In this document: positions 10,301 to 35,242 of the stretch, one piece after another
Numbering within the stretch: position 1 is the stretch's first letter
Layout of the letters: every line of letters starts with the position of its first letter
Source: Macrostomum lignano
Lineage: Eukaryota
Assembly: GCA_002269645.1 (NCBI GenBank)
Contig: NIVC01002575.1
Span: 1-37,512 of the forward strand
DNA length: 37,512 bases
Direction: 5' to 3'
Program-made: the position numbers and the translations under genes
Notes under the pieces: generated by a model
Seen by the model: the letters and a program-made list of their open reading frames with translations, nothing else
The model's database searches: none
Told to the model about the DNA's origin: nothing

Positions 10301-13300
10301 GAGAGGGGGCGGCCTAGTCTGCAGATCTGAGAGGGGGCGGCCTAGTCTGCAGATCTGAGAGGGGGCGGCCTAGTCTGGGGATCTGAGAGGGGGCGGCCTA
10401 GTCTGCAGATCTGAGAGGGGGCGGCCTAGTCTGCGGATCTGAGAGGGTGGCGGCCTAGTCTGGGGATCTGAGAGGGGACGGCCTAGTCTGCGGATCTGAG
10501 AGGTTGGTACTTAGTCTGCAGATCTGAGAGGGGGCGGCCTAGTCTGCAGATCTGAGAGAAAGGCGGCCTAGTCTGGGGATCTGAGAGGGGGCGGCCTAGT
10601 CTGGGGATCTGAGAGGGGGCGGCCTAGTCTGGGGATCTGAGAGGTTGGTACTTAGTCTGCAGATCTGAGAGGGGGCGGCCTAGTCTGGGGATCTGAGAGG
10701 GGGCGGCCTAGTCTGGGGATCTGAGAGGGGGCGGCCTAGTCTGGGGATCTGAGAGGGGGCGGCCTAGTCTGCAGATCTGAGAGGGGGCGGCCTAGTCTGC
10801 AGATCTGAGAGGGGGCGGCCTAGTCTGGGGATCTGAGAGGGGGCGGCCTAGTCTGGGGATCTGAGAGGGGGCGGCCTAGTCTGCAGATCTGAGAGGGGGC
10901 GGCCTAGTCTGCGGATCTGAGAGGGTGGCGGCCTAGTCTGGGGATCTGAGAGGGGACGGCCTAGTCTGGGGATCTGAGAGGTTGGTACTTAGTCTGCAGA
11001 TCTGAGAGGGGGCGGCCTAGTCTGCAGATCTGAGAGGGGGCGGCCTAGTCTGCGGATCTGAGAGGGTGGCGGCCTAGTCTGGGGATCTGAGAGGGGACGG
11101 CCTAGTCTGGGGATCTGAGAGGTTGGTACTTAGTCTGCAGATCTGAGAGGGGGCGGCCTAGTCTGCAGATCTGAGAGGGGGCGGCCTAGTCTGCGGATCT
11201 GAGAGGGTGGCGGCCTAGTCTGGGGATCTGAGAGGGCACGGCCTAGTCTGGGGATCTGAGAGGTTGGTACTTAGTCTGCAGATCTGAGAGGGGGCGGCCT
11301 AGTCTGCAGATCTGAGAGGGGGCGGCCTAGTCTGGGGATCTGAGAGGGGGCGGCCTAGTCTGCAGATCTGAGAGGGGGCGGCCTAGTCTGGGGATCTGAG
11401 AGGGGACGGCCTAGTCTGGGGATCTGAGAGGTTGGTACTTAGTCTGCAGATCTGAGAGGGGGCGGCCTAGTCTGCAGATCTGAGAGGGGGCGGCCTAGTC
11501 TGCGGATCTGAGAGGGGGCGGCCTAGTCTGCAGATCTGAGAGGGGGCGGCCTAGTCTGCAGATCTGAGAGGGGGCGGCCTAGTCTGCGGATCTGAGAGGG
11601 TGGCGGCCTAGTCTGGGGATCTGAGAGGGGACGGCCTAGTCTGGGGATCTGAGAGGTTGGTACTTAGTCTGCAGATCTGAGAGGGGGCGGCCTAGTCTGC
11701 AGATCTGAGAGGGGGCGGCCTAGTCTGCGGATCTGAGAGGGGGCGGCCTAGTCTGCAGATCTGAGAGGGGGCGGCCTAGTCTGCGGATCTGAGAGGGGGC
11801 GGCCTAGTCTGCGGATCTGAGAGGGGGCGGCCTAGTCTGCAGATCTGAGAGGGGGCGGCCTAGTCTGCGGATCTGAGAGGGTGGCGGCCTAGTCTGGGGA
11901 TCTGAGAGGGGACGGCCTAGTCTGGGGATCTGAGAGGTTGGTACTTAGTCTGCAGATCTGAGAGGGGGCGGCCTAGTCTGCAGATCTGAGAGGGGGCGGC
12001 CTAGTCTGCAGATCTGAGAGGGGCGGCCTAGTCTGGGGATCTGAGAGGGGGCGGCCTAGTCTGGGGATCTGAGAGGGGGCGGCCTAGTCTGGGGATCTGA
12101 GAGGGGGCGGCCTAGTCTGCAGATCTGAGAGGGGGCGGCCTAGTCTGCAGATCTGAGAGGGGGCGGCCTAGTCTGGGGATCTGAGAGGGGGCGGCCTAGT
12201 CTGCAGATCTGAGAGGGGGCGGCCTAGTCTGCGGATCTGAGAGGGTGGCGGCCTAGTCTGGGGATCTGAGAGGGGACGGCCTAGTCTGCGGATCTGAGAG
12301 GTTGGTACTTAGTCTGCAGATCTGAGAGGGGGCGGCCTAGTCTGCAGATCTGAGAGAAAGGCGGCCTAGTCTGGGGATCTGAGAGGGGGCGGCCTAGTCT
12401 GGGGATCTGAGAGGGGGCGGCCTAGTCTGGGGATCTGAGAGGTTGGTACTTAGTCTGCAGATCTGAGAGGGGGCGGCCTAGTCTGGGGATCTGAGAGGGG
12501 GCGGCCTAGTCTGGGGATCTGAGAGGGGGCGGCCTAGTCTGGGGATCTGAGAGGGGGCGGCCTAGTCTGCAGATCTGAGAGGGGGCGGCCTAGTCTGCAG
12601 ATCTGAGAGGGGGCGGCCTAGTCTGGGGATCTGAGAGGGGGCGGCCTAGTCTGGGGATCTGAGAGGGGGCGGCCTAGTCTGCAGATCTGAGAGGGGGCGG
12701 CCTAGTCTGCGGATCTGAGAGGGTGGCGGCCTAGTCTGGGGATCTGAGAGGGGACGGCCTAGTCTGGGGATCTGAGAGGTTGGTACTTAGTCTGCAGATC
12801 TGAGAGGGGGCGGCCTAGTCTGCAGATCTGAGAGGGGGCGGCCTAGTCTGCGGATCTGAGAGGGTGGCGGCCTAGTCTGGGGATCTGAGAGGGGACGGCC
12901 TAGTCTGGGGATCTGAGAGGTTGGTACTTAGTCTGCAGATCTGAGAGGGGGCGGCCTAGTCTGCAGATCTGAGAGAAAGGCGGCCTAGTCTGGGGATCTG
13001 AGAGGGGGCGGCCTAGTCTGGGGATCTGAGAGGGGACGGCCTAGTCTGGGGATCTGAGAGGTTGGTACTTAGTCTGCAGATCTGAGAGGGGGCGGCCTAG
13101 TCTGCAGATCTGAGAGGGGGCGGCCTAGTCTGGGGATCTGAGAGGGGGCGGCCTAGTCTGGGGATCTGAGAGGGGGCGGCCTAGTCTGCAGATCTGAGAG
13201 GGGGCGGCCTAGTCTGCGGATCTGAGAGGGTGGCGGCCTAGTCTGGGGATCTGAGAGGGGACGGCCTAGTCTGGGGATCTGAGAGGTTGGTACTTAGTCT

Positions 13301-16300
13301 GCAGATCTGAGAGGGGGCGGCCTAGTCTGCAGATCTGAGAGGGGGCGGCCTAGTCTGCGGATCTGAGAGGGGGCGGCCTAGTCTGCAGATCTGAGAGGGG
13401 GCGGCCTAGTCTGCGGATCTGAGAGGGGGCGGCCTAGTCTGCGGATCTGAGAGGGGGCGGCCTAGTCTGCAGATCTGAGAGGGGGCGGCCTAGTCTGCGG
13501 ATCTGAGAGGGTGGCGGCCTAGTCTGGGGATCTGAGAGGGGACGGCCTAGTCTGGGGATCTGAGAGGTTGGTACTTAGTCTGCAGATCTGAGAGGGGGCG
13601 GCCTAGTCTGGGGATCTGAGAGGGGGCGGCCTAGTCCGGGGATCTGAGAGGGGGCGGCCTAGTCTGGGGATCTGAGAGGGGACGGCCTAGTCTGGGGATC
13701 TGAGAGGTTGGTACTTAGTCTGCAGATCTGAGAGGGGGCGGCCTAGTCTGCAGATCTGAGAGGGGGCGGCCTAGTCTGCAGATCTGAGAGAAAGGCGGCC
13801 TAGTCTGGGGATCTGAGAGGGGGCGGCCTAGTCTGGGGATCTGAGAGGGGGCGGCCTAGTCTGGGGATCTGAGAGGGGACGGCCTAGTCTGGGGATCTGA
13901 GAGGTTGGTACTTAGTCTGCAGATCTGAGAGGGGGCGGCCTAGTCTGCAGATCTGAGAGGGGGCGGCCTAGTCTGGGGATCTGAGAGGGGGCGGCCTAGT
14001 CTGCAGATCTGAGAGGGGGCGGCCTAGTCTGCGGATCTGAGAGGGTGGCGGCCTAGTCTGGGGATCTGAGAGGGGACGGCCTAGTCTGGGGATCTGAGAG
14101 GTTGGTACTTAGTCTGCAGATCTGAGAGGGGGCGGCCTAGTCTGCAGATCTGAGAGGGGCGGCCTAGTCTGCGGATCTGAGAGGGGGCGGCCTAGTCTGC
14201 AGATCTGAGAGGGGGCGGCCTAGTCTGCGGATCTGAGAGGGGACGGCCTAGTCTGCGGATCTGAGAGGGGGCGGCCTAGTCTGCAGATCTGAGAGGGGGC
14301 GGCCTAGTCTGCGGATCTGAGAGGGTGGCGGCCTAGTCTGGGGATCTGAGAGGGGACGGCCTAGTCTGGGGATCTGAGAGGTTGGTACTTAGTCTGCAGA
14401 TCTGAGAGGGGGCGGCCTAGTCTGCAGATCTGAGAGAAAGGCGGCCTAGTCTGGGGATCTGAGAGGGGGCGGCCTAGTCCGGGGATCTGAGAGGGGGCGG
14501 CCTAGTCTGGGGATCTGAGAGGGGACGGCCTAGTCTGGGGATCTGAGAGGTTGGTACTTAGTCTGCAGATCTGAGAGGGGGCGGCCTAGTCTGCAGATCT
14601 GAGAGGGGGCGGCCTAGTCTGCGGATCTGAGAGGGGGCGGCCTAGTCTGCAGATCTGAGAGGGGGCGGCCTAGTCTGCAGATCTGAGAGGGGGCGGCCTA
14701 GTCTGCGGATCTGAGAGGGTGGCGGCCTAGTCTGGGGATCTGAGAGGGGACGGCCTAGTCTGGGGATCTGAGAGGTTGGTACTTAGTCTGCAGATCTGAG
14801 AGGGGGCGGCCTAGTCTGCAGATCTGAGAGAAAGGCGGCCTAGTCTGGGGATCTGAGAGGGGGCGGCCTAGTCTGGGGATCTGAGAGGGGGCGGCCTAGT
14901 CTGGGGATCTGAGAGGGGGCGGCCTAGTCTGGGGATCTGAGAGGGGGCGGCCTAGTCTGGGGATCTGAGAGGGGGCGGCCTAGTCTGCGGATCTGAGAGG
15001 GGGGCGGCCTAGTCTGGGGATCTGAGAGGGGGGCGGCCTAGTCTGAACAAAAGCCTAGAAATTAAAATGAAGGCTCAAGTGTAAATTAGAAGCATAAATA
15101 CGAAGCCTTATGGTTTCTTCGTATATGCATAAGCTCAGGAATACTGAGTCGCAACACAGTGAGCACAGTGAGCACAAGACAGGGACATAGCAAGAAATAA
15201 GCGATTTATTGAAACAAAAGATTTGTGTTCCCTAAGTACAACGATTTCATAGTACGCCAATCACTCTAGTAATTGGTTATATACTGGTAATCTGAGTATA
15301 ATGCAGATTCGCTCGCATTTTTACAACCCCCAGAGTTAACTCAACAAATCAGTTACCATGTGTACTTTATACAATAGTTAGATCTTTGCAACAAATTGCG
15401 TGTAGCTTGATAATATAAAATTTGTTGCATGCACGAAGCACTGAGACCTTGTGCTGGACCTTAGATTAGAGTCCTGATACAGGCAAATGAGACCTAATAA
15501 GTCAAGTATTGAGAGGTACAGGGGAATGTCAAGCTAATGTAACAGAGCCGCTCACAAACAAAAGCTTGAGAGCCAGGCCAAACGCAGTCTTATCTTGCCA
15601 GGCATGAAACAGAATAGATTGAGAGCAATGGGAAACTCAGGCTTAGATAATTGCTCCAGGGAAGCTGTGATGTCAACACAAATTTAGACCGTTTTTTTTC
15701 CTATGCGGAAAATGCCAAACCACAACAGGCACACGCTTCTTACAAGCTAATCTTTGTGTGTAGAGACACACCCTCTTTAGTTATTATGGCCATAACAGTT
15801 GAATAACAAATTTTCATGATAAACAAACACAAACTTTTATGCACCTTTTTGTTAAAAATGTTTTTGTTAAACTGTGCACTATATCACTATATTTTCCATC
15901 TTTCTCTTGTCTATATAGTGCTCTGTCTAAAAAATATTTAATTTCAAACCATATGAGTGGCAGTATCAACTGTTCAAAATTATGATTGAGCTGATAAAGC
16001 CAGAGTCTAACAGGTTCACAAATCTAAAAAGGATTAAAATAAATAGAATAAAATAAACAAAAACCAATATACTTTCTGCTCTCTGTCTTTCTTCCAAGTT
16101 AAATTTTTTTGACATTGTGAACTCTAAGTAGCTATTTTAACCTCATGGCCAACAAACTATCCTCAGCGCAACAATAAAAAAGCAATTACCAGTGCTTTCA
16201 TCAGCAGCCAAAATTCCACGACCAGGTGCAACAATAGCATTTGCAATGTCCCTTAGCTCTTTTTGCTTCTTAGCACTTAGGTATTCAGCAAACTGAGGCA

Positions 16301-16301
16301 T
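7307..16301 (-). CDS. ALDO: Fructose-bisphosphate aldolase, class I (~366 aa after correcting one missing G)
   Basis: Exons 16301-16190 ([38 protein letters not shown]), 8572-8106, 8007-7666 and 7485-7307, all GT-AG with compatible phases. Catalytic motifs ADES, GIKVDKG, FAKWR, IVEPEV, LKPNM (Schiff-base Lys), [17 protein letters not shown] and the C-terminal ...LFVEKHQY are present. The last exon needs +1 G at 7351-7353. Confidence 0.96.
8737..15045 (+). repeat. 6.3-kb minisatellite, 28-bp unit TAGTCTG(CA/CG/GG)GATCTGAGAGGGGGCGGCC, ~220 copies, inside aldolase coding intron 1 (8573-16189)
   Basis: Read directly from the sequence. There is a small set of recurring variant units (gggtggcggcc, ggggacggcc, ggttggtact, agaaaggcggcc) and divergent dimer-type units at the left edge (8737-8990). 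Confidence 0.99.
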
Positions 16302-18435: not shown

Positions 18436-18542
18436 AGCACAGCACTATAGCTTCATTTAATTTTTACATGACACTTCTTTCATGTCTGACATGATACTTC
18501 TTTTGACTTTTACATGAAATTTCCATTAGTTTTAATAAGAGG

Positions 18543-19277
18543 CTTCTATGATTTTTTGATGACGCTTCTATGACATTTTACATGACGCTTCTATGATTTT
18601 TACATGACGCTTCTATGATTTTCACAAGACGCTTCTATGATTTTTTTACATGACGTTTCTATGATTGTTTACATGACGCTTCTATGATTTTTTACATGAC
18701 ACTTCTATGATTTTTACATGACGCTTCTATGATTTTTTACATAACGCTTCTATGATTTTTTACATGACGCTTCTATGATTGTTTACATGACGCTTCTATG
18801 ATTTTTATATGATGCTTCTACGATTCTTTACATGACGCTTCTATGATTTTTTACATGACGCTTCTATGATTTTTTACATGACGCTTCTACGATTCTTTAC
18901 ATGACGCTTCTACGATTCTTTACATGACGCTTCTATGATTTTTTACATGACGCTTCTACGATTCTTTACATGACGCTTCTATGATTTTTTACATGACGCT
19001 TCTATCATTGTTTACATGACGTTTCTATGATTGTTTACATGACGCTTCTATGATTTTTATATGACGTTTTTACGATTTTTTACATGACGCTTCTATGATT
19101 CTTTACATGACGCTTCTATGATTTTTACATGACGTTTCTATGATTTTTTAAATGACGCTTCTATGATTTTTTATATGACGCTTCTATGATTTTTTACATG
19201 ACGCTTCTATGATTTTTACATGACGCTTCTATGATTTTTTATATGACGCTTCTATGATTTTTTTACATGACGCTTCT
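18543..19277 (+). repeat. Minisatellite, 21-24-bp unit CATGACGCTTCTATGA(T)4-7A, ~33 copies
   Basis: Read directly. The T-run length varies between units, and decayed precursor units occur at ~18205-18530. Confidence 0.97.
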
Positions 19278-22860: not shown

Positions 22861-23632
22861 TTGCCTATTATTTTAATTTATATGGTAATTTATAAGGTCA
22901 CTGTGAATGATATGAATGACTTTATTTAAGAATGTATGCAAGAATAGTTCTAGGGATTGGAATTCAAGGGGTTTCAATAGCTTGTTGTTATATAATTGGT
23001 AAGAGGCATTAGTGCCTATCTTAATAACTCCTTTGAATAGGCATATAAAATTAAAGTAAAAAAACTATTTTTATTTTACAAGGTTGTTTACAAGGTCATA
23101 TTCATATCTTAATGCATTGTCATCTTCAGGGCATACCACAATAATCCCAACAAACTATATTTATAAATAGAACTAGAACCAAGGTAATGGATAGAATGGT
23201 ATCAACCTAAAGTGTTATGAGTTGGCACTGAAGGGGACTTTCTCTTTTCTAACTATATTGTATGCTTATTTATCAACTACACTAAAATAAAACCATTCTG
23301 AATCCAATAGATTCGATTGACCTAAGATTTTAAGTAAAAAAATTACTTAATCCCAAAATGGATTATACTACATGTCTAAAATATAAAATTTAGAGTAATA
23401 TAACTTCTAGAATTTTTTGTATACTAATTCCTATAGTTTTGACACTTTGTATAAAAGAGCATATAAAAATTGGAGGATGTGTTCTACAATTAATCTTAAT
23501 TGTGCCATTTAATGGGTTATCCTACCTTTAATGTTTAGTGAATAGTTTTTCACTGTTACTGCCATTAGCACAGGTCCATATTCCCAGTTTGTTAAATTTC
23601 AGTAAAGCAAATCTAATTAACTAAGCACAATT

Positions 23633-26600
23633 ATGGACGTTGTTAAGGCTATCCGCGACTACATTCAGACCATGCTACAGATCAGTGGACAGGGCATGAA
23701 GATACTGTTAATGGACCAGGAGACCATAGAGATACTGTCAGTTGCTTATACAATGTCAGAGATTAGTAAGCACGAGGTGTTCCTACTTGAGAGGCTGGAG
23801 AGTCCTCGCCAGCCAATGAAGCATCTCAAAGCTGTTGTATTTGTTCGGCCAACCAAGGCCAACATGCAGCTGCTGCACGCCGAGCTTCGCAGTCCAAAGT
23901 ACGGCTCGTACTGTTTATTCTTTAGTCAAGCAATTAGCCGACAGGATTTAAAGAGTTTAGCCGAACACGACGAGCAAGAGGTTGTACGCGAAGTTCAAGA
24001 GGTGTTCGCCGACTACCTGGCGCTGAGCCCGCTGCTCTTCACCCCCAATCAGCGTCTGGCTGTGCGCGGATTCGCCTGGCAGCCCGGCGCGTTGCAGCGC
24101 TGCGCCGAAGGCCTGGCAGGCGTGCTTCTGTCGTTGAAACGGCTGCCGTTTATTCGCTATCAGAACTCGTCCGCCAATGCTCGCCGGCTGGCCGAGCAGC
24201 TGGCTGGGCTGGTAGAACGAGAGAAAGAGGGACTGTTTAACTTTCAGGTGCGTTGCGATTTTTTATTGTCGACATGATTGTGAAATATACGAGTACATAC
24301 GAATTTGATTAAATAATAAAAATACAGTGGAAGTGGAAGTCAATGCAAGAGAGAAAAACGAAACAAAGTATAAATAGTCAGGCTGGTTCAAACACAAAGA
24401 GAAGTTGGTTTGTGCACTTTCCTGCTAGGTTGATGTAGCTGGATTTTTACGAAAAACTTTCAACAGACGCCCAACAGAGAGTAGTGTCACTTGTCACTAA
24501 CTAAACTTCTATTGTTTTAGTATATGTGACTAGCCATTTAGCCCCTCCTCTGGGTGGCTCTATAATAATTTCGCACAAACTCCTATTAGATATTAAGTAA
24601 GCATCTAAACCCCGAACTGTTTTAGTAGCATCTTCAGCTATATGCTTGTACCCTAAAGTAGTCACGTGGTAATCGGATCCCTCTTTTTAACAAAATGTAT
24701 TTTTAAAATATTCTTCAGCTATTTTTAACACATTCTTACACATTCTTACTTTGCTACTCAGTAGTTAACCGCAAACACTAATTGTTTATTTAGGAGCGCG
24801 GCGCCACCCACCTGCTTGTGCTAGACAGACGCGAAGATCCAGTAACCCCTCTACTAAACCAGTGGACCTACCAGGCTATGGTGCACGAACTGCTGGGCAT
24901 ACGCAACAATGTTGTTGAATTGGGCGACACCAAGGTCAATCTGAGTGCTCAATACGACGATTTTTATCGCGATCATTGGCACGTGAATTTTGGCGAACTG
25001 GGCGCCGCTGTCAAACAGCTAATGGAAGAGTTTCAGAGGAAACAGCAGGCCACGGCTGGAAAGATTGAAAGCATTGGAGATATGAAAAATTTTGTGGAAA
25101 ATTATCCCGCTTTTAAGAAATTGTCCGGCAGTGTTACTAAACACGTTAATCTGATGTCCGAGATTTCTAAGCTAGTTGGAGAGCGAAATCTGCTTGAGGT
25201 TTGTCTGCATTTGCTGCTGTGATCATCGTTTTGAATCTTCAGGTTATTGCCCCAGTCCTCAGTGAGTGCTGCCACCCGTTTGCCCTACCAGCTCCTCAGT
25301 GAGTGCTGCCACCCCTTTACCCTACCAGCTCTTGATTGAGTGCTGCCAACTCCTTTGCCCCAACAGCTCTTCATTGAGTGCTGCCAACTCCTTTGCCCTA
25401 CCAGCTCCTGAGTGAGTGCTGCCACCCCTTTACCCTACCAGCTCCTCAGTGAGTGCTGCCACCCCTTTACCCTACCAGCTCCTCAGTGAGTGCTGCCACC
25501 CCTTTACCCTACCAGCTCCTCAGTGAGTGCTGCCACCCCTTTACCCTACCAGCTCCTGAGTGAGTGCTGCCACCCCTTTACCCTACCAGCTCCTCAGTGA
25601 GTGCTGCCACCCCTTTACCCTACCAGCTCCTCAGTGAGTGCTGCCACCCCTTTACCCTACCAGCTCCTCAGTGAGTGCTGCCACCCCTTTACCCTACCAG
25701 CTCCTCAGTGAGTGCTGCCACCCCTTTACCCTACCAGCTCCTCAGTGAGTGCTGCCACCCCTTTACCCTACCAGCTCCTCAGTGAGTGCTGCCAACTCCT
25801 TTGCCCTATCAGCTCCTCAGTGAGTGCTGCCAACTCCTTTGCCCTACCAGCTCCTCAGTGAGTGCTGCCAACTCCTTTGCCCGTGGTTTGAAATATTGAC
25901 AGTTTTCCAATGGTTAAAACATGCCAAACCAACTGCTTGTCCCATAGGTGTCCGAACTCGAGCAAGAGCTGGCAGCCCTAGGCGGCGAGGCGCACGCCCA
26001 CCTGCAGCGGGTTCAGCATCTGATCGCTTCGCCGAAAGTCACGGAGCTGGACGCGCTCCGGCTGGCGCTGCTGTTTGCGCTGCGCTACGAGACTCAGGCA
26101 GCGTCGGCGCTGCCAGCCCTGCGGGACGCCTTGGCGCGTAGGGGGCTCAACGAACAGCAGACCGGGCTCATCGCGGCGCTGCTCAGGTGAGGAGACTGCA
26201 GAAAAAAAAATAGTTTTGAATATTAAGTGAGAAATAGTCTATGAAAGAGTTTGCTGCTGATGTCTATGGCCAAATTATCAACTTTGGTGCCTTTTCCGTC
26301 TATGTCTATGGGCAAGACCGATCGCGAATCTAGCGCAGCTAAATAGGAGAATTCTCAACTTGGTTAGCTTAACTATCAAGGCTGTAGAAAGCAACACCAG
26401 GTTAGTATAGCATTTTGCAGCCCATTTGGGCTTACGCGCATTGAATTTAATCCAAGATACGTTTGCCAATGTAACAGAGCATTTGTCTATGGTAGCAAGG
26501 CTGGCGCAGCGGCATTTAATTTGGTCCAAAAAGCATCAATTTGGTCCAAACACTCGTGAGCCATTGGACAAACTCTTGCCTTCTCTCAACCGTCTGCAGG

Positions 26601-27854
26601 TTTTTGCGCACCGCTGGAATGTCAGCGTCTCTACCAAAAATTTTCGGTTGCTTTTCCAGAGCTCTGCTGATAGTCGAAATCTGATAACCAACTGGAGCTG
26701 TTCCCTCAACTTCTGCTGCATTTCGGCAACGTCAACAAAGGGTTCGTCTCAACTGCATCGAGCAGCAGTTGGACCTGAGGCTCTCGAGCAACTTGCCTTG
26801 GCGATTGCCACCCTTTCGCAGGCGATCTCTGCCGGCAGAGTTTCAACGCGCTGCTGGATTCTGTAAACCACCTTTGGGTGTTCACCTCCGTCGAGTGCTT
26901 CGATCACAAGCCAATGACATTCGTTCAACAGCCTAGCATATGGTCCACAATTCTGGGACTGAGCTGCAAATGAACTAAATGGACCAAATTGATGCTTGTT
27001 GGACCAAATTAAATGCCGCTGCGCTAGCCTTGCTACCATAGACAAAAGCTCCATTACTTTGACAAACATATCTTGGATTAAATTCGATGCACGTAAGCCC
27101 AAATGGGCTGCAAAAAGCTATATTAAAATCAAATGGTAATCAGGTGACCATGAGGGCCTTTAACGACTCGAAACGCGTCTAATACGACTTGAGTGGCGCG
27201 TCACAAGCGCGTCACTTAGAGTCGCAGACGATAAAACGCTTTAAAAGGACTAAGGCAACTCTTTTACGACTTTTTGGCATTTTATATCTCGTAGTTTAGA
27301 ATAACTTCTGTCTTACTTTACTGGGACATGAACCTTTTGTTTCTCTTTGCTGCAGATACGGCGGCGTCAAGGCTCGAACCAGCGACCTATTCGGCACGCA
27401 GACGCCGCTGTCAGTTACCAAGCGCCTATTCAAAGGCATTAAAGGTGTTGAAAATATTTTTACTCAACACCAACCGCTGCTGGCCGACCTCATTGATCAG
27501 GCTTGCAAAGCCAAGCTCAAGGAGGCCGCCTATCCGTTCGTGTCGGCGCCGTCTGCCGCGGCACAGCAGCGACCAGCTGACCTCATTGTCTTCGTTGTTG
27601 GCGGCGTCACCTATGTTGAAGCCCTGGCTGTGCACAATTGCAATAAGAACATACCAGTTGTCAACGTGTTGCTAGGCGGTACATCAGTGATTAATACTCG
27701 ATCATTCCTTGAAGAGGTGGCCGCCGCTGTCGACTCGTCGGCTGAGCCGCCGACTTCGGGCGGATCGGCGCCGACTGGCTCCAGCAGCGGACCAGCTGGC
27801 GGGGTTGGGCCCGCTGCCAGGCTGCTCAGCGGGATTAAGGCCAATCGGTTTTGA
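23633..27854 (+). CDS. VPS45: Vacuolar protein sorting 45 (Sec1/Munc18 family), 585 aa, intact
   Basis: Exons 23633-24247, 24794-25198, 25948-26186 and 27356-27854 total 1758 nt and join in frame. Motifs: [61 protein letters not shown]...[47 protein letters not shown]. Confidence 0.97.
25250..25882 (+). repeat. 37-bp minisatellite CAGCTCCTCAGTGAGTGCTGCCACCCCTTTACCCTAC, ~17 copies, VPS45 intron 2
   Basis: Read directly. The centre is homogeneous, with 38-bp CCAACTCCTTTGCCC variants at both ends. Confidence 0.98.
26408..27120 (-). mobile_element. Internally deleted Tc1/mariner-IS630-like DNA transposon in VPS45 intron 3
   Basis: ~140-bp TIRs at 26408-26548 and 26980-27120 (roughly 88% identical by eye), flanked by TA on both sides (26406-07, 27121-22). 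The spacer encodes a frameshifted transposase N-terminal HTH region on the minus strand: [10 protein letters not shown]...RIQQR...[10 protein letters not shown]...[40 protein letters not shown]. No DDE domain remains. Confidence 0.75.
27155..27250. repeat. Imperfect ~95-bp fold-back (MITE-like palindrome)
   Basis: Nested complementary blocks CCTTTAA/TTAAAAGG, CGTCT/AGACG, CGACT/AGTCG and GAGTGGCGCG/CGCGTCACTT surround a TCACAAG loop. Confidence 0.55.
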
Positions 27855-27981
27855 CTTTCTAGATGAGCTCTGATTGCTATTCAATATTCGTGTGATTTTG
27901 CTTGTTTCCTCTGTGCATGTCTTCTTTCGCTCTCATTTAAGAAAATTTACTTTGATGTTGATGTAATCTCGATCCTAAGCC

Positions 27982-29232
27982 CCCTAATTGGGACTTTATA
28001 ATCCCAATCATTAATCCTTTAAAAGTGATCCCTAATTGGGACTTCATAATCCCGATGGCCAATCACCTGATCGGGATCCCTAATTGGGACCTTAGAATCC
28101 CGATGGCCAATCACCTGATCGGGATCCCTAATTGAGACCTCATAATCCCGATTGCCACTCACCTGATCGGGATCCCTAATTGAGACCTCAGAATCCCGAT
28201 GGCCAATCACCTGATCGGGATCCCTAATTGGGACTTCATAATCCCGATGGCCAATCACCTGATCGGGATCCCTAATTGAGACCTTAGAATCCCGATGGCC
28301 AATCACCTGATCGGGATCCCTAATTGGGACTACATAATCCCAATGGCCAATCACCTGATCGGGATCCCTGATTGGGACTACATAATCCCGATGGCCAATC
28401 ACCTGATCGGGATCCCTAATTGAGACCTTAGAATCCCGATGGCCAATCACCTGATCGGGATCCCTAATTGAGACCTCAGAATCCCGATGGCCAATCACCT
28501 GATCGGGATCCCTAATTGAGACCTTAGAATCCCGATGGCCAATCACCTGATCGGGATCCCTAATTGGGACTTCATAATCCCGATGGCCAATCACCTGATC
28601 GGGATCCCTAATTGAGACCTCAGAATCCCGATGGCCAATCACCTGATCGGGATCCCTAATTGAGACCTCAGAATCCCGATGGCCAATCACCTGATCGGGA
28701 TCCCTAATTGAGACCTCATAATCCCGATGGCCAATCACCTGATCGGGATCCCTAATTGAGACCTTAGAATCCCGATGGCCAATCACCTGATCGGGATCCC
28801 TAATTGGGACTTCATAATCCCGATGGCCAATCACCTGATCGGGATCCCTAATTGAGACCTCAGAATCCCGATGGCCAATCACCTGATCGGGATCCCTAAT
28901 TGAGACCTCAGAATCCCGATGGCCAATCACCTGATCGGGATCCCTAATTGAGACCTCATAATCCCGATGGCCAATCACCTGATCGGGATCCCTAATTGAG
29001 ACCTTAGAATCCCGATGGCCAATCACCTGATCGGGATCCCTAATTGGGACTTCATAATCCCGATGGCCAATCACCTGATCGGGATCCCTAATTGAGACCT
29101 CAGAATCCCGATGGCCAATCACCTGATCGGGATCCCTAATTGAGACCTCAGAATCCCGATGGCCAATCATCTGATCGGGATCCCTAATTGAGACCTCAGA
29201 ATCCCGATGGCCAATCATCTGATCGGGATCCC
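27982..29232 (+). repeat. 48-bp minisatellite GATCGGGATCCCTAATTG(A/G)GAC...ATCCCGATGGCCAATCACCT, ~25 copies
   Basis: Read directly. There are no indels among the regular units, and a BamHI site occurs in each unit. It yields the stop-free 399-aa minus-strand ORF 28019-29218 of 16-aa repeats. Confidence 0.99.
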
Positions 29233-29814
29233 AAAGTTTTAGTTAAAGTTTCTGATCTGATTGATAGATATATGATCAGCAGAATTCCAAAATACTTTGC
29301 AACGCTTTGGTTTATCCATCTGTACAAACCCGTGTCTCAACTTTGTTAATTCGTTTCTTTTTAAGTTTTCTGATGTTCTCTAGCATTCATGATAATTATG
29401 ACCTGAGGAGCGCTTTGTAATTGATGCTTTTTTTAGCTTCATATTTATATTGCATTAGTCATTGTGTGCTCAAGGAACAAAACAAGCATAACTAACCCAG
29501 ATTTATTATATAAATGTTATAAACCATTGTCTAATAATAGCTATTGTCCATAATAACATATTAATCGATGCATAGTAAAACTCTGGTATACTGTCTTGTG
29601 ATATGTGCTTTTACCTGTGTTGTGAACTTGAAAATAAATATATAGTCAAATACCTGCCGTTTGCCGCACTGTTGTCTGTTGGTTGATTAATTGCTTTTCT
29701 GAGCAGAATATATTTTTTATTTTTGCACCAGATGGGATATAGGAATATGCGTGATGAACCAATATTTACGAGTGATTGTATTACAGCTCAGTTTCCAACC
29801 TCACCGACCCTCGA

Positions 29815-31172
29815 GCTGGGCCACCGCCAGCCTCCCAGATCCTCAGTTACTGGGCCAGCCTCCCAGATCCTCAGTTGCTGGGCCAGCTTCCCAGACCCTC
29901 AGTTGCTGGGCCAGCCTCCCAGACCCTCAGTTGCTGGGCCAGCCTCCCAGACCCTCAGTTGCTGGGCCAGCCTCCCAGACCCTCAGTTGCTGGGCCAGCT
30001 TCCCAGACCCTCGGTTGCTGGGCCAGCTTCCCAGACCCTCGGTTGCTGGGCCAGTCTACCAGACCCTCAGTTGCTGGGCCAGCCTCCCAGACCCTCAGCT
30101 GTTGGGCCAGCCTCCCAGACCCTCAGTTGCTGGGCCAGCCTCCCAGACCCTCAGTTGCTGGGCCAGCCTCCCAGACCCTCAGTTGCTGGGCCAGCTTCCC
30201 AGACCCTCGGTTGCTGGGCCAGTCTACCAGACCCTCAGTTGCTGGGCCAGCCTCCCAGACCCTCAGCTGTTGGGCCAGCCTCCCAGACCCTCAGTTGCTG
30301 GGCCAGCCTCCCAGACCCTCAGTTGCTGGGCCAGCCTCCCAGACCCTCAGTTGCTGGGCCAGCTTCCCAGACCCTCGGTTGCTGGGCCAGTCTACCAGAC
30401 CCTCGGTTGCTGGGCCAGTCTACCAGACCCTCAGTTGCTGGGCCAGCCTCCCAGACCCTCAGTTGTTGGGCCAGCTTCTCAGACCCTCAGTTACTGGGCC
30501 AGCTTCCCAGACCCTCAGTTGCTGGGCCAGCCTCCCAGACCCTCAGTTGCTGGGCCAGCCTCCCAGACCCTCAGTTGCTGGGCCAGCTTCCCAGACCCTC
30601 GGTTGCTGGGCCAGTCTACCAGACCCTCGGTTGCTGGGCCAGTCTACCAGACCCTCAGTTGCTGGGCCAGCCTCCCAGACCCTCAGTTGTTGGGCCAGCT
30701 TCTCAGACCCTCAGTTACTGGGCCAGCTTCCCAGACCCTCAGTTGCTGGGCCAGCCTCCCAGATCCTCAGTTGCTGGGCCAACCTCCCAGACCCTCAGTT
30801 GCTGGGCCAGCCTCCCAGACCCTCAGTTGCTGGGCCAGCCTCCCAGACCCTCAGTTGCTGGGCCAGCCTCCCAGATCCTCAGTTGCTGGGCCAGCTTCCC
30901 AGACCCTCAGTTGTTGGGCCAGCTTCTCAGACCCTCAGTTACTGGGCCAGCTTCCCAGATCCTCGGTTGCTGGGCCAGTCTACCAGACCCTCAGTTGCTG
31001 GGCCAGCCTCCCAGACCCTCAGCTGTTGGGCCAGCCTCCCAGACCCTCAGTTGCTGGGCCAGCCTCCCAGATCCTCAGTTGCTGGGCCAGCTTCCCAGAC
31101 CCTCAGTTGTTGGGCCAGCTTCTCAGACCCTCAGTTACTGGGCCAGCTTCCCAGATCCTTAGTTGCTGGGCC
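29815..31172 (+). repeat. 28-bp minisatellite GGGCCAGCCTCCCAGACCCTCAGTTGCT, ~48 copies, immediately upstream of MRM2
   Basis: Read directly. It is open in all three + frames, which explains ORFs 29723-31162, 29751-31883 and 29776-31188. Confidence 0.99.
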
Positions 31173-31214
31173 CCATACTCCAGTATAATCCTACAGCGTA
31201 TATCCTCCACACAG

Positions 31215-32659
31215 AATATTTCAATAAGGAGCCGAGCCAAGTCAATAATCAGCTCCCAAACTCTGCTGTTGCAGCGCCGCGCCTATTGCGCAATCCGCAA
31301 TCCCGGCAATCCGTGGGTTGTCCGGCAGCTCCGCGATGTTTACGTGCGCAAGGCCCGCTACGAGTCCTACAGATGCCGCAGCGCCTACAAATTGATGGAG
31401 ATGCACGAGAAGCTGAACCTCTTCCAGCCCGGCCAGTGCATTGTTGAGTGCGGCGCCGCTCCCGGCTCCTGGACTCAAGTGCTCGCTAGGCAGCTCAAAG
31501 GACCCCAGGTTTGCCTCATGTTTTTTATTACTATAGCTAACCTTATCTCCCGGCAGGCTTGCTTCTGTTCGTATTTTATTCATCGGGGTTGTAGCCTAGT
31601 GAGGGGTTGTAGCTTAGTGAGGGGTTGTAGCTTAGTGAGGGGTTGTAGCTTAGTGAGGGGTTGTAGCCTAGTGAAGGGTTGTAGCCTAGTGAGGGGTTGT
31701 AGCTTAGTGAGGGGTTGTAGCTTAGTGAGGGGTTGTAGCTTAGTGAGGGGTTGTAGCCTAGTGAAGGGTTGTAGCCTAGTGAGGGGTTGTAGCTTAGTGT
31801 GGGGTTGTAGCTTAGTGAGGGGTTGTAGCCTAGTGAGGGGTTGTAGCTTAGTGAGGGGTTGTAGCCTAGGGCTTGTAGCCTAGTGGTTAGAGCATCGGAC
31901 TTACGACTGAAATGTCGCTTGTTCGATTCCCGATCCCACTCGGAACGATTTGTATTTTTGAGCAAGACACTTAAGTCTGCATTGCTTCAGTTCATCCAGC
32001 TGTAAAATGGGGGCCAGCATCAACTGGGATAATTGTGGGTGTATGTGGAGTGTGGCGACCCCCAATCCTTGGACTGAACAGCCGTACTCAGCCTTCAGAT
32101 GCGCCGCTGTCGGTTGCACATCGGCCTAAAAATATAAACTGGAAATATTTTATTTTTGGGAGCTCAATTCAAGGTCATTGTCTGTCACTTTCTCAGTCTC
32201 CCCAACACATTCTACCAGGTTCCGGAGCCGGCTCGCAGCCAGGCCCTGATCGTAGCATTCGACCTTCAACACATCGCCCCAGTGCCGAATGCCGTCTGCC
32301 TCTCCGAGGTGGACATCCGATCTGCCCAGTGTCTGGCATCGCTGCGAGAAGCTCTGACGGACCGACCAGTCGATTGGGTGCTCTCCGACATGGCGCCGAG
32401 CGCTTCCGGCGAGCGTAGTCTCGACTCCGCCGTCTGCGTTGAACTCTGCGAATTGGCGCTTCAGCTGTGCCTTCGTCTGGGCCGGCCGGGCTCCGGCTTT
32501 GTCTGCAAACTTTGGGACGGCGCGGAGACCGCGCGCCTAGAGGCGCCGCTGCATCGATTCTTTACTGGTGGCGTGCGGCGAGTCAAACCGCCGGCTAGCA
32601 GGGGCGACTCAGCCGAGTTCTACTTTGTTGCCCGCGGCCTCCAACTGCCGTCTGCCTGA
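31215..32659 (+). CDS. MRM2: Mitochondrial rRNA 2'-O-methyltransferase MRM2 (FtsJ2/RrmJ family); start codon not located
   Basis: Exon ~31215-31508 (WVVRQLRDVYVRKARYESYRCRSAYKLMEMHEK...IVECGAAPGSWTQV), intron 31509-32218, and exon 32219-32659 (AFDL...VDWVLSDMAPSASG...GFVCKLWDG...VKPPASRGDSAEFYFVA). The K-D-K-E catalytic tetrad motifs and the SAM-binding GAAPG loop are present. The two exons encode 244 codons, matching normal MRM2 length. Confidence 0.93.
31585..31868 (+). repeat. 18-bp minisatellite GGGGTTGTAGC(C/T)TAGTGA, 15 full copies plus 1 partial, in the MRM2 intron
   Basis: Read directly. The unit equals the first ~18 nt of the adjoining tRNA-like head (GGGCTTGTAGCCTAGTGG). A 5-unit (90-bp) sub-periodicity is visible. 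Confidence 0.98.
31869..32135 (+). mobile_element. tRNA-derived SINE with CORE (MIR-like) central domain
   Basis: A box TAGCCTAGTGG (31876-86) and B box TGTTCGATTCC (31920-30) start 44 nt apart. TTGAGCAAGACACTTAAGTCTGCATTGCTTCAGTTCATCCAGCTGTAAAATGGGG (31958-32012) resembles the recalled MIR/CORE consensus. An unidentified 3' tail ends in an A-rich stretch at ~32128-32138. Confidence 0.75.
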
Positions 32660-32670
32660 CTGACTTGTGA

Positions 32671-33202
32671 GCGTGACTGGCACTCTTGAGTAGCTCTAGT
32701 GTGATCAGGCAGTGTGACTGGCACTCTTGAGTAGCTCTACTGTGATCAGGCAATGTGACTGGCACTCTTGAGTAGCTCTACTGTGATCAGGCAATGTGAC
32801 TGGCACTCTTGAGTAGCTCTACTGTGATCAGGCAGTGTGACTGGCACTCTTGAGTAGCTCTACTATGATCAGGCAGTGTGACTGGCACTCTTGAGTAGCT
32901 CTACTGTGATCAGGCAGTGTGACTGGCACTCTTGAGTAGCTCTACTGTGATCAGGCAGTGTGACTGGCACTCTTGAGTAGCTCTACTGTGATCAGGCAGT
33001 GTGACTGGCACTCTTGAGTAGCTCTAATAAGATCAGGCAGTGTGACTGGCACTCTTGAGTAGCTCTAATAAGATCAGGCAGTGTGACTGGCACTCTTGAG
33101 TAGCTCTAATAAGATCAGGCAGTGTGACTGGCACTCTTGAGCTCTACTAGGATCAGGCAGTGTGACTGGCACTCTTGAGTAGCTCCTATATGTAGGATCA
33201 GA
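32671..33202 (+). repeat. 41-bp minisatellite GTGTGACTGGCACTCTTGAGTAGCTCTACTGTGATCAGGCA, ~13 copies
   Basis: Read directly. It begins about 12 nt after the MRM2 stop codon. Confidence 0.98.
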
Positions 33203-33524
33203 CAGTGGGACTGGCATGGCACCCTTAGGGCAGTGGGACTGGCATGGCACCCTTAGGGCAGTGGGACTGGCATGGCACCCTTAGGGCAGTGGGACTGGCA
33301 TGGCACCCTTAGGGCAGTGGGACTGGCATGGCACCCTTAGGGCAGTGGGACTGGCATGGCACCCTTAGGGCAGTGGGACTGGCATGGCACCCTTAGGGCA
33401 GTGGGACTGGCATGGCACCCTTAGGGCAGTGGGACTGGCATGGCACCCTTAGGGCAGTGGGACTGGCATGGCACCCTTAGGGCAGTGGGACTGGCATGGC
33501 ACCCTTAGGGCAGTGGGACTGGCA
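33203..33524 (+). repeat. 28-bp minisatellite CAGTGGGACTGGCATGGCACCCTTAGGG, ~11.5 identical copies
   Basis: Read directly. It abuts the 41-bp array and shares CAGTG(T/G)GACTGGCA with it. Confidence 0.98.
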
Positions 33525-33927: not shown

Positions 33928-35242
33928 GCATCTCAGCAATTCCCCCTTGAGCCTTGGCTTATCAGCAATTCCCTTGAGCCTTGGCTTATCAGCAATTCCC
34001 CCTTGAGCCTTGGCTTATCAGCAATTCCCCCTTGAGCCTTGGCTTATCAGCAATTCCCCCTTGAGCCTTGGCTTATCAGCAATTCCCCTTGAGCCTTGGC
34101 TTATCAGCAATTCCCCCTTGAGCCTTAGCTTATCAGCAATTCCCCCTTGAGCCTTGGCTTATCAGCAATTCCCTCTTCAGACTTTGGCATCTCAGCAATC
34201 TCTCCTCGAGCCTTGGCATCTCAGCATTCTCTCCTTGAGACTTGGGCATCTCAGCATTCTCTCCTTGAGACTTGTCATCTTAGCATTCTCTCCTTGAGAC
34301 TTGTCATCTTTGCATTCTCTCCTTGAGACTTGGGAATCTCAGAATTCCCCCTTGAGACTTGGGCATCTCAGCATTCCCCTTGAGACTTGGGCATCTCAGC
34401 AGTTCCCCTTGAGACTTGTCATCTTAGCATTCTCTCCTTGAGCCTTGGCATCTCAGCAATCTCTCCTTGAGACTTGGCATCTCAGCATTCTCTCCTTGAG
34501 ACTTGGGCATCTCAGCAAATCCCCTTGAGCCTTGGCTTATCAGCAATTCCCCCTTCAGACATTGGCATCTCAGCAATCTCTCCTTGAGACTTGGGCATCT
34601 CAGCATTCTCTCCTTGAGACTTGGGCATCTCAGCATTCCTTCTTGAGACTTGGGCATCTCAGTATTCTCTCCTTGAGACTTGGGCATCTCAGCATTCCCC
34701 CTTGAGACTTGGGCATCTCAGCATTCCCCCTTGAGACTTGGGCATCTCGGTATTCTCTCCTTGAGACTTGGGCATCTCAGCATTCCCCCTTGAGACTTGG
34801 GCATCTTAGCATTCCCCTTGAGACTTGGGCATCTCAGCATTCTCTCCTTGAGACTTAGGCATCTCAGCATTCTCTCCTTGAGACTTGGGCATCTCAGCAT
34901 TCCCCCTTGAGACTTGGGCATCTCAGCATTCCCCCTTGAGACTTGGGCATCTCAGCATTCTCTCCTTGAGACTTGGGCATCTCAGCATTCCCCCTTGAGA
35001 CTTGGGCATCTCAGCATTCCCCCTTGAGACTTGGGCATCTCAGCATTCCCCTTGAGACTTGGGCATCTCAGCATTCCCCCTTGAGACTTGGGCATCTCAG
35101 CATTCCCCCTTGAGACTTGGGCATCTCAGCATTCCCCCTTGAGACTTGGGCATCTCAGCATTCCCCCTTGAGACTTGGGCATCTCGGTATTCTCTCCTTG
35201 AGACTTGGCATATCAGCATCCCCCGCCCCCCGAGCCTTGGCA
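33928..35242 (+). repeat. 28-30-bp minisatellite GAG(A/C)CTTGG(G)CATCTCAGCA(A)TTCCCCCTT, ~45 copies, upstream of CHEK2
   Basis: Read directly. It is zoned: GAGCCTTGGCTTATCAGC units on the left, mixed units in the middle, and GAGACTTGGGCATCTCAGC units on the right. Confidence 0.98.

What the first reader, a model, noticed from the sequence alone, without database searches (positions are those of the whole stretch)
31173..31310. MRM2 has no start codon of its own: candidate spliced-leader-supplied AUG creating the mitochondrial presequence
There is no in-frame ATG between the satellite and the conserved SYRCRSAYKL block; the first Met comes after it. Two in-frame phase-0 acceptors are present (CCTACAG|31197 and CCACACAG|31215). 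Adding a single Met at 31215 gives a 245-aa protein, the normal MRM2 length. It would start M-NISIRSRAKSIISSQTLLLQRRAYC, which is Arg/Ser/Leu-rich, acid-free and has an R-x-Y|C cleavage-like motif. Established knowledge: flatworm spliced leaders end in AUG, and that AUG can act as initiator. Inference: mitochondrial targeting of this enzyme depends on trans-splicing, and choosing between the two acceptors 18 nt apart would alter the presequence.
Basis: partly seen in the sequence, partly recalled or inferred. Interest (0 to 1): 0.7.

Follow-up and report, generated by a model that had tools for sequence, protein, structure and literature searches.

The report
Flatworm MRM2 gene borrows its start codon

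Summary
The window is contig NIVC01002575.1 of the Macrostomum lignano Mlig_3_7 assembly. It carries an intact two-exon MRM2/FtsJ gene (31275-31508 and 32219-32659). There is no ATG in any frame from 29757 to 31335. The first in-frame ATG (31395) lies just after the catalytic Lys codon (31389), so it cannot be the start.

M. lignano trans-splices about 30% of its genes to a 35-nt leader that ends in ATG. The published RNA-based GenBank annotation calls this CDS 5'-partial in all three genomic copies. It starts at 31272 in two copies and at 31278 in the third.

So an AUG supplied by the leader is the best explanation (about 0.7). The main product is more likely M-RRAYCAIRNPGNPW... Sites 31197 and 31215 remain possible minor acceptors, and only older gene models use them.

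MRM2 also looks like the downstream gene of a VPS45-MRM2 operon whose spacer is inflated by satellites.

The mechanism has been known since 2006, so this is a new member of a known kind. Interest is low to moderate. No spliced-leader reads could be examined.

The parts
23633..27854 (+). VPS45 gene with its own ATG. Exons are 23633-24247, 24794-25198, 25948-26186 and 27356-27854. It is the upstream gene of the putative two-gene transcription unit.
   Evidence: tblastn placed the exons and I refined the splice sites by hand. The 585-aa model is an exact match to UniRef100_A0A1I8JIT2, M. lignano VPS45. The GenBank CDS spans 23621-27854.
27855..31274 (+). Spacer between VPS45 and MRM2, read here as the intercistronic region or outron. 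It holds a 48-nt satellite (28027-29232), AT-rich unique DNA (29233-29825) and a 28-nt satellite (29826-31172).
   Evidence: TRF arrays. Length is 3420 nt, or 867 nt once the two arrays are subtracted. No GT[A/G]AG donor occurs on the + strand. Satellite copy number differs between genomic copies, 3417 versus 3161 nt.
31191..31196 (+). In-frame candidate acceptor CTACAG|31197. It would give M-RISSTQNISIRS..., 251 aa.
   Evidence: It matches the published [T/C]TNCAG motif. The chimeric VPS45-MRM2 UniProt model P0407 uses it.
31209..31214 (+). It would give M-NISIRSRAKS..., 245 aa.
   Evidence: It does not match the published motif. The older UniProt fragment P0408 starts exactly here without a Met.
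31269..31274 (+). In-frame acceptor TTGCAG|31275, the most probable spliced-leader trans-splice site. It would give M-RRAYCAIRNPGNPW..., 225 aa.
   Evidence: It matches the motif and has the highest pyrimidine content of the sites (0.70). The GenBank 5'-partial CDS starts at 31272 in two copies and at the equivalent of 31278 in the third. GC and GC3 rise at this point.
31275..31508 (+). MRM2 exon 1 coding part. It holds the conserved WVVRQLRDVYVRKARYESYRCRSAYKL block, the catalytic Lys codon (31389-31391), the first in-frame ATG (31395-31397) and the GAAPGSW SAM-binding motif. The donor is CAG|GTTTGC at 31509.
   Evidence: Translation. Pfam FtsJ, E = 1.9e-45. Alignment to human MRM2, PDB 7o9k.
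31509..32218 (+). MRM2 intron. It contains an 18-nt satellite (31585-31869) and a tRNA-like SINE-like segment.
   Evidence: GT...AG boundaries. TRF. The GenBank CDS of 225 aa over 31272-32659 needs this intron.
32219..32659 (+). MRM2 exon 2, ending in the TGA stop. It holds the remaining catalytic residues: D in LSDMAP, K in FVCKLW and E in SAEFYF.
   Evidence: Translation. Alignment to human MRM2.

Best explanation
The gene is the Macrostomum lignano orthologue of mitochondrial rRNA 2'-O-methyltransferase MRM2. Its pre-mRNA has no initiator codon.

Proposed mechanism: the 35-nt spliced leader (...TTATTGCATG) is trans-spliced onto an in-frame acceptor just upstream of the conserved domain, and the leader's terminal AUG becomes the initiator Met. 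The main acceptor is most probably TTGCAG|31275, giving M-RRAYCAIRNPGNPWVVRQL... (225 aa). The in-frame acceptors at 31197 and 31215 may serve as minor alternatives that would add 20-26 basic, Ser-rich, acid-free residues.

The gene probably lies downstream of VPS45 in one transcription unit. Two satellites stretch the spacer to 3.4 kb, and trans-splicing both releases the MRM2 mRNA and supplies its start codon.

Shown here:
- the gene structure and the absence of an ATG
- in-frame acceptors and the identity of the organism
- the annotated 5'-partial CDS start

Inferred:
- that spliced-leader reads sit at 31275
- that the leader AUG is translated
- that VPS45 and MRM2 are co-transcribed
- that the product is imported into mitochondria
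For: 1. Identity of the organism and contig. My VPS45 model matches UniRef A0A1I8JIT2 exactly. The locus is NIVC01002575.1 of GCA_002269645.1.

2. M. lignano biology (PMC8629364). The spliced leader is CGGTCTCTTACTGCGAAGACTCAATTTATTGCATG. About 30% of genes are trans-spliced and about 15% sit in operons. The trans-acceptor motif is [T/C]TNCAG. Repeats inflate operon spacers, and the paper uses a 1-kb repeat-adjusted threshold. [quoted passage not shown]

3. No usable ATG. There is no ATG in any frame from 29757 to 31335. The first in-frame ATG falls after the catalytic Lys.

4. GenBank annotation. The CDSs PAA56773.1, PAA48684.1 and PAA48587.1 are 5'-partial. They start at 31272, 31272 and the equivalent of 31278. 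This annotation sets gene 5' ends from mapped spliced-leader reads with the TBONE pipeline (PMC5730564). The neighbouring VPS45 CDS starts right after an upstream in-frame stop codon. This suggests CDSs were drawn as open frames without regard to a start ATG. The MRM2 frame has no upstream stop until 29700. A start at 31272 therefore means the mRNA model itself begins there.

5. Acceptor quality. TTGCAG|31275 fits the motif, has the best pyrimidine tract and is in frame.

6. Composition. GC rises from 0.45 to 0.62 and GC3 from 0.54 to 0.78 at about 31275.

7. Operon signs. The genes are on the same strand. The repeat-adjusted spacer is 867 nt (plus arithmetic). There is no GTRAG donor in the spacer. 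A chimeric VPS45-MRM2 model exists in UniProt (P0407). At copy L002 the MRM2 gene is named Mlig024799g4, and a VPS45 on the same contig, with the adjacent accession, is named Mlig024799g1.

8. Precedent. The flatworm leader AUG is a proven initiator. It is in frame in 28% of S. mansoni trans-spliced mRNAs and required by more than 40 cDNAs (Cheng et al. 2006, as summarised in PMC9851317). Its use is conserved in E. granulosus (PMC3510090).
Against: - No spliced-leader RNA read or cDNA was examined. The trans-splice site is inferred from CDS boundaries that sit 3 nt to either side of the junction, not on it.
- I could not see whether the published annotation flags this gene as trans-spliced (supplement searches were empty).
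- Exact look-ups of every predicted leader-Met protein found nothing in the public protein collection.
- A 14-residue N-terminal extension is at the short end for MRM2. The predicted product has 32 residues before YRxRSAYKL, against a median of 61.5 and a range of 21-105 in 34 orthologues. That argues for the longer isoforms being needed for import.
- The GC shift rests on only 78 nt, and VPS45 exon 2 is equally AT-rich.
- A cis-spliced micro-exon (ATG 29754 with donor CGA|GTGATT at 29772, phase 0) cannot be excluded from sequence. The aldolase gene in this same window has a first intron that holds a 6.3-kb satellite.
Confidence: 0.7

Rival explanations
1. The spliced leader is trans-spliced mainly at 31215 (or 31197). 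The leader AUG then opens a 34-40-residue Arg/Ser/Leu-rich cleavable mitochondrial presequence, and choice between these two acceptors tunes import.
For: - Both sites are in frame with no stop.
- The resulting 245-aa protein numbers almost one to one with human MRM2.
- N-terminal length before YRxRSAYKL is 52-58, close to the orthologue median of 61.5.
- The extension has 6-7 basic and no acidic residues.
- Older UniProt models start at 31215 (P0408) or splice into 31197 (P0407).
Against: - The RNA-evidence-based GenBank models start at 31272 or 31278 in all three copies, although the frame is open upstream.
- ACACAG|31215 does not fit the published trans-acceptor motif.
- The 31197-31274 stretch has non-coding-like GC and GC3.
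- One older copy carries an L-to-Q change in this stretch.
- The older models are probably ab initio predictions forced by the missing ATG.
Confidence: 0.2
2. A cis-spliced 5' exon upstream of the 28-nt satellite supplies the ATG. One candidate is ATG 29754 - MNQYLR - with donor CGA|GTGATT at 29772, joined to 31215 or 31197. The satellite would then lie in a first intron.
For: - The candidate exon is phase-compatible.
- Satellites sit inside introns elsewhere in this window: aldolase intron 1 (7.6 kb with a 6.3-kb array), VPS45 intron 2 and the MRM2 intron.
- The candidate is identical in all three copies.
Against: - The donor does not match M. lignano's GT[G/A]AG motif, and no GTRAG occurs anywhere in the 3.4-kb spacer.
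- Out-of-frame ATGs at 29732 and 29747 lie just upstream of the candidate.
- The evidence-based annotation has no such exon in any copy.
- The three copies are near-identical, so conservation carries no weight.
Confidence: 0.07
3. MRM2 is made as, or only as, a VPS45-MRM2 fusion. A cis-splice would run from a cryptic donor in the last VPS45 exon (GGG|GTTGGG, 27802/27803) to acceptor 31197, as in UniProt A0A1I8IJ25.
For: An 819-aa chimeric model exists with n=3 in UniRef, and the junction is in frame.
Against: - The donor is very weak (no GTRAG).
- An N-terminal 570-aa Sec1 domain would block mitochondrial import of an enzyme that acts on the mitoribosome.
- GenBank's RNA-based annotation keeps the two genes separate.
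- Chimeric models are a recognised artefact, or signature, of flatworm operons (PMC12582326).
Confidence: 0.04
4. The mRNA is not trans-spliced. Translation starts at a near-cognate non-AUG codon upstream of W34, or the locus is a non-functional copy.
For: In-frame near-cognates exist: ATA 31185 and 31200, ATC 31188, ATT 31218 and CTG 31263. The aldolase gene in the same contig shows an apparent frameshift, so broken genes or assembly indels do occur here.
Against: - The ORF, splice sites, SAM motif and K-D-K-E tetrad are intact.
- The sequence is identical in three copies.
- Out-of-frame AUGs at 31336 and 31373 would precede any downstream start.
- The organism has a ready source of AUG in its spliced leader.
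Confidence: 0.05

Closest known systems
Flatworm mRNAs that use the spliced leader's 3'-terminal AUG as initiator Met (Cheng, Cohen, Ndegwa and Davis 2006, J Biol Chem 281:733; 'slORFs' in PMC9851317)
   Same: - The leader ends in AUG.
- The acceptor is in frame with the ORF.
- No other AUG can give a full-length conserved N-terminus.
- The same logic was applied to S. mansoni (more than 40 cDNAs) and E. granulosus (PMC3510090). That list includes transcripts similar to an NADH-ubiquinone oxidoreductase subunit and to COX6B, with the leader AUG in frame.
   Different: - The species is a free-living macrostomorph, not a neodermatan.
- No cDNA or read evidence was seen here.
- I found no paper naming MRM2 as such a case.
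- Three in-frame acceptors lie within 78 nt.
Echinococcus granulosus thioredoxin glutathione reductase: alternative trans-spliced mRNAs that encode mitochondrial and cytosolic variants (Agorio et al. 2003, J Biol Chem 278:12920; only the title was seen, through reference lists)
   Same: A flatworm gene in which trans-splicing determines whether a mitochondrial N-terminus is present.
   Different: The paper could not be read here, so its details rest on the title. For MRM2 no alternative isoforms are shown, and a cytosolic role for MRM2 is not expected.
M. lignano operons resolved by spliced-leader trans-splicing, with spacers inflated by repeats (Ustyantsev and Berezikov 2021, PMC8629364)
   Same: - A same-strand gene pair.
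- The downstream gene starts at a [T/C]TNCAG acceptor.
- The raw spacer of 3.4 kb shrinks to 867 nt after removing tandem repeats, under their 1-kb threshold.
- The upstream gene also has a TTTCAG acceptor 30 nt before its ATG.
   Different: The typical adjusted spacer is about 100 nt. Co-transcription is inferred here from naming and a chimeric model, not observed.
Human MRM2 (FTSJ2), PDB 7o9k/7o9m/7ods
   Same: The match is E = 1e-45 over residues 32-237. The K-D-K-E residues and the GAAPGxW motif are conserved, and the overall length is nearly identical if translation starts at 31215.
   Different: Human MRM2 has its own AUG and, from my own knowledge, an N-terminal transit peptide of about 18 residues. 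The flatworm gene encodes no AUG.

Membership tests
MRM2 / RlmE (FtsJ-type rRNA 2'-O-methyltransferase, mitochondrial) | FtsJ methyltransferase domain | tested here: met
   Pfam PF01728, E = 1.9e-45, covering model positions 1-180 of 181.
MRM2 / RlmE (FtsJ-type rRNA 2'-O-methyltransferase, mitochondrial) | K-D-K-E catalytic tetrad and GxAPGxW SAM-binding motif | tested here: met
   SAYK59L, LSDMAP, FVCKLW, SAEFYF and GAAPGSW all align with identical residues in human MRM2, PDB 7o9k.
MRM2 / RlmE (FtsJ-type rRNA 2'-O-methyltransferase, mitochondrial) | Closer to MRM2 than to the paralogues FTSJ1 and FTSJ3/Spb1 | tested here: met
   Against PDB sequences: MRM2 1e-45, FTSJ1-type 1.5e-29, FTSJ3 1.7e-21. 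The best database hits are annotated as mitochondrial rRNA methyltransferase 2.
MRM2 / RlmE (FtsJ-type rRNA 2'-O-methyltransferase, mitochondrial) | N-terminal mitochondrial targeting signal | tested here: inconclusive
   All candidate N-termini are basic and free of acidic residues. The most likely one is only 14 residues long. No targeting predictor was available.
Flatworm mRNAs initiated at the spliced-leader AUG | The organism has a spliced leader that ends in AUG | tested here: met
   The organism was identified as M. lignano. The 35-nt leader ending in ATG is given in PMC8629364.
Flatworm mRNAs initiated at the spliced-leader AUG | The mRNA carries the spliced leader at an acceptor upstream of the ORF | not testable with these tools
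   Only indirect evidence is available. The evidence-based GenBank CDS is 5'-partial and begins within 3 nt of TTGCAG|31275 in three copies. No reads or cDNAs were accessible.
Flatworm mRNAs initiated at the spliced-leader AUG | The leader AUG is in frame with the conserved ORF, with no intervening stop | tested here: met
   True for junctions 31197, 31215 and 31275.
Flatworm mRNAs initiated at the spliced-leader AUG | No genomic AUG can give the conserved N-terminus | tested here: met
   There is no ATG in any frame from 29757 to 31335. The first in-frame ATG lies after the catalytic Lys.
Flatworm mRNAs initiated at the spliced-leader AUG | Translation actually starts at the leader AUG | not testable with these tools
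   This needs N-terminal proteomics, ribosome profiling or reporter assays.
M. lignano operon (polycistronic unit resolved by spliced-leader trans-splicing) | Adjacent same-strand genes with a repeat-adjusted spacer under 1 kb and a trans-spliced downstream gene | tested here: inconclusive
   The genes share a strand and the spacer is 867 nt after subtracting the TRF arrays. Trans-splicing of the downstream gene is only inferred. Supporting signs are the chimeric model P0407 and the shared unit prefix Mlig024799 (g1 and g4) at copy L002.

The most novel reading that the evidence does not exclude
Three in-frame trans-splice acceptors within 78 nt (31197, 31215, 31275) are all used. Each borrows the same spliced-leader AUG, giving MRM2 isoforms with N-terminal extensions of 40, 34 or 14 residues. 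Acceptor choice would then set the strength or cleavability of the mitochondrial targeting signal, and so import efficiency or dual localisation, for an rRNA-modifying enzyme encoded in a satellite-stretched operon with VPS45.
Probability: 0.15. Interest if true: 0.45.

Novelty: new member of a known kind. Interest (0 to 1): 0.25.

Why it matters
The case shows why some conserved flatworm genes appear as 'partial' or chimeric models. Here there are three different public models for one gene: a 5'-partial 225-aa CDS, a fragment that starts at N (31215) without a Met, and an 819-aa VPS45-MRM2 fusion. Annotation pipelines for Macrostomum and other flatworms should add the spliced-leader AUG before calling ORFs.

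Biologically, it would add an essential mitoribosome-maturation enzyme to the set of genes whose translation depends wholly on trans-splicing. It would also give a concrete locus for testing whether acceptor choice tunes mitochondrial targeting, in an organism where transgenesis is available.

The mechanism itself is not new.

Tried and rejected
- Organism identification by homology. The MRM2, VPS45 exon 1 and aldolase fragment searches gave hits of at most 46%, 55% and 81% identity and no species signal. One search timed out. The word-index search seems to return only proteins of about the query's length. The MRM2 proteins of this species were also hidden inside a cluster represented by VPS45.\n- Representative search plus cluster names. 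Only bat, branchiopod and nematode cluster heads appeared, which was uninformative.\n- What worked: an exact look-up of a hand-built full-length VPS45 model.\n- Rfam and ARAGORN on the window found nothing. No spliced-leader sequence occurs in the window.\n- Exact look-ups of 16 hypothetical MRM2 products were all absent from the collection. These covered leader-Met forms at the three junctions, allelic variants, leader-extended ORFs, internal-Met forms and the 6-aa micro-exon form.\n- Supplement searches for Mlig003446, Mlig024799, Mlig002693, MRM2 and FTSJ2 in PMC5730564 and PMC5816591 returned nothing.\n- Cheng 2006 and Agorio 2003 are not held. PMC3101182 turned out to describe cis-alternative splicing and was not used as a precedent.\n- Read-through ORF from ATG 29754 across the satellite (731 aa). 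Rejected because it is in frame only in this copy and terminates before MRM2 in the other two.\n- Internal Met 61 as the start. Rejected because it removes the catalytic Lys and the conserved N-terminal block.
Full report
**1. What is in the sequence**

The finding lies at the 5' end of a two-exon gene on the + strand. Exon 1 runs to 31508, with donor CAG|GTTTGC. A 710-nt intron follows. Exon 2 is 32219-32659 and ends in TGA.

The product is an FtsJ-type methyltransferase (Pfam PF01728, E = 1.9e-45). It is closest to mitochondrial MRM2. Against solved structures, human MRM2 scores 1e-45, FTSJ1-type enzymes 1.5e-29 and FTSJ3 1.7e-21. The GAAPGxW motif and the Lys, Asp, Lys and Glu catalytic residues are all identical to human MRM2.

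**2. Checking the observation**

- The coding frame is open from 29703 through the whole 28-nt satellite (29826-31172) into exon 1.
- On the + strand there is no ATG in any frame between 29754 and 31336.
- The next two ATGs (31336, 31373) are out of frame.
- The first in-frame ATG (31395) is two codons after the catalytic Lys (31389-31391). A protein started there would lack that Lys and the conserved WVVRQLRDVYVRKARYESYRCRSAYKL block.
- Met plus the sequence from 31215 gives 245 aa, which numbers almost one to one with human MRM2.
- The 270 nt around the site are identical in three independent contigs, so the missing ATG is real.

Taken alone, a run of 74 ATG-free codons and a few in-frame AGs are near chance expectation. 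Homology makes the case.

**3. Which organism**

Homology searches gave no close relative. I then built a full VPS45 gene model from the window (exons 23633-24247, 24794-25198, 25948-26186, 27356-27854). It is an exact match to UniRef100_A0A1I8JIT2 of Macrostomum lignano.

The window is the whole contig NIVC01002575.1 of assembly GCA_002269645.1, Mlig_3_7.

M. lignano has one 35-nt spliced leader, CGGTCTCTTACTGCGAAGACTCAATTTATTGCATG. About 30% of its genes are trans-spliced and about 15% are in operons. The enriched trans-acceptor motif is [T/C]TNCAG (PMC8629364).

**4. What public annotation says**

The same cluster look-up returned this gene's public models.

- GenBank PAA56773.1 (this contig) and PAA48684.1 (copy L002) start QRRAYCAIRNPG..., at 31272. 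PAA48587.1 (copy L003) starts RAYC..., at the equivalent of 31278. All three are flagged partial.
- That annotation is built from RNA-seq. Gene 5' ends are set from mapped spliced-leader reads by the TBONE pipeline (PMC5730564).
- The VPS45 CDS in the same annotation begins right after an upstream in-frame stop (LSTIM...). This suggests CDSs were drawn as open frames. The MRM2 frame is open for 1.5 kb upstream, so a start at 31272 means the mRNA model itself begins there.
- This site fits the published motif and has the best pyrimidine tract of all AGs in the region. CTACAG|31197 also fits the motif.
- GC rises from 0.45 to 0.62 and GC3 from 0.54 to 0.78 at about 31275. This is suggestive, but it rests on only 78 nt.
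A0A1I8JIW4 starts at N (31215) with no Met. A0A1I8IJ25 is an 819-aa VPS45-MRM2 chimera that joins a weak donor (GGG|GTTGGG at 27802/27803) to 31197. These look like predictions forced by the missing ATG.

**5. Mechanism proposed**

The leader's terminal AUG, joined at an in-frame acceptor, is the initiator. The most likely product is M-RRAYCAIRNPGNPW... (225 aa). Sites 31197 and 31215 may be minor alternatives.

MRM2 also looks like the second gene of a VPS45-MRM2 unit.
- The two genes are on the same strand.
- The 3420-nt spacer shrinks to 867 nt once the two satellites are removed. That is below the 1-kb repeat-adjusted operon threshold of PMC8629364.
- No GT[A/G]AG donor occurs in the spacer.
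- A chimeric model exists, which PMC12582326 treats as an operon signature.
- At copy L002 the MRM2 gene is named Mlig024799g4, and a VPS45 on the same contig, with the adjacent accession, is named Mlig024799g1.

**6. Doubts**

- No spliced-leader read was seen. The annotated starts are 3 nt to either side of the junction, not on it.
- A 14-residue extension is short. The predicted product has 32 residues before YRxRSAYKL, against an orthologue median of 61.5 and a range of 21-105. The 31215 and 31197 forms, at 52 and 58, are typical.
- All three N-termini are basic and free of acidic residues. Targeting is unresolved.

**7. Rivals**

- A cis-spliced micro-exon (ATG 29754, MNQYLR, donor at 29772) is phase-compatible. 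Satellites do sit in introns here: the aldolase first intron is 7.6 kb with a 6.3-kb array. However, the donor is poor, out-of-frame ATGs lie just upstream, and no annotated model has this exon.
- The read-through ORF from 29754 across the satellite is in frame only in this copy.
- Start at Met 61, non-AUG initiation and pseudogene status are unlikely for the reasons given above.

**8. Comparison with what is known, and novelty**

Use of the flatworm leader AUG as initiator Met is established. It is in frame in 28% of S. mansoni trans-spliced mRNAs and required by more than 40 cDNAs (Cheng et al. 2006, as summarised in PMC9851317). It is conserved in E. granulosus, where the listed transcripts with the leader AUG in frame include ones similar to an NADH-ubiquinone oxidoreductase subunit and to COX6B (PMC3510090). 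For Macrostomum, PMC10468722 notes that the leader likely contains the start ATG. Alternative trans-splicing that gives mitochondrial and cytosolic variants is reported for E. granulosus TGR (Agorio et al. 2003; title only).

This locus is therefore a new member of a known kind. The remaining open point is whether three in-frame acceptors give isoforms with different import behaviour.

**9. Verdict**

Interest is 0.25.

Noticed in passing
window 7300-7485 (- strand): The last exon of the class I aldolase gene has an apparent frameshift after a (GGC)n run. The in-frame reading ends ...[32 protein letters not shown]. The conserved C-terminus [14 protein letters not shown] is in the +1 frame. This is either an assembly indel or a broken copy.
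   Followed up: partly
window 8572-16301 (- strand): Aldolase exon 1 (16301-16190, with its own ATG and AT-rich codons) is separated from exon 2 (starting at 8572) by a 7.6-kb intron. That intron holds the 6.3-kb, 28-nt satellite (8738-15045). Exon 1 sits in a 30-35% GC block, while the other exons are GC-rich.
   Followed up: partly
window, nine tandem arrays (8738-15045, 18460-19277, 25252-25882, 28027-29232, 29826-31172, 31585-31869, 32673-33216, 33203-33524, 33928-35224): About a third of the contig is minisatellite with 18-48-nt units. The arrays lie in introns, directly after stop codons (32673 follows the MRM2 TGA by 14 nt) and between genes. Array length differs between the three genomic copies.
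   Followed up: partly
window 31585-31960: The 18-nt satellite in the MRM2 intron (GGGGTTGTAGCTTAGTGA) looks like repeated copies of the 5' end of an adjacent tRNA-like, SINE-like segment (ggcttgtagcctagtggttagagcatcgg...ttcgattcccg). ARAGORN calls no tRNA there.
   Followed up: no
window 26426-27102: VPS45 intron 3 contains a large inverted duplication. ORFs on opposite strands encode near-identical peptides ([13 protein letters not shown]... and [13 protein letters not shown]...).
   Followed up: no
window 23597-23632: VPS45 has a motif-matching acceptor, TTTCAG|, 30 nt upstream of its own ATG, so it too may be trans-spliced. Its GenBank CDS is drawn from the codon after an upstream stop (LSTIM...) and flagged partial.
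   Followed up: partly
window 200-3700 (- strand): Exons of an ABC transporter (an ABCA-like nucleotide-binding domain) run off the left part of the contig. They were not analysed.
   Followed up: no
L002 15586 and L003 7730: Downstream of MRM2 in the other two copies, a protein kinase gene model starts at an internal Met inside the kinase domain (...GAFGEVKLVFETGTCHRYA|MKIISKK). The model is probably truncated. The window ends before this gene.
   Followed up: no
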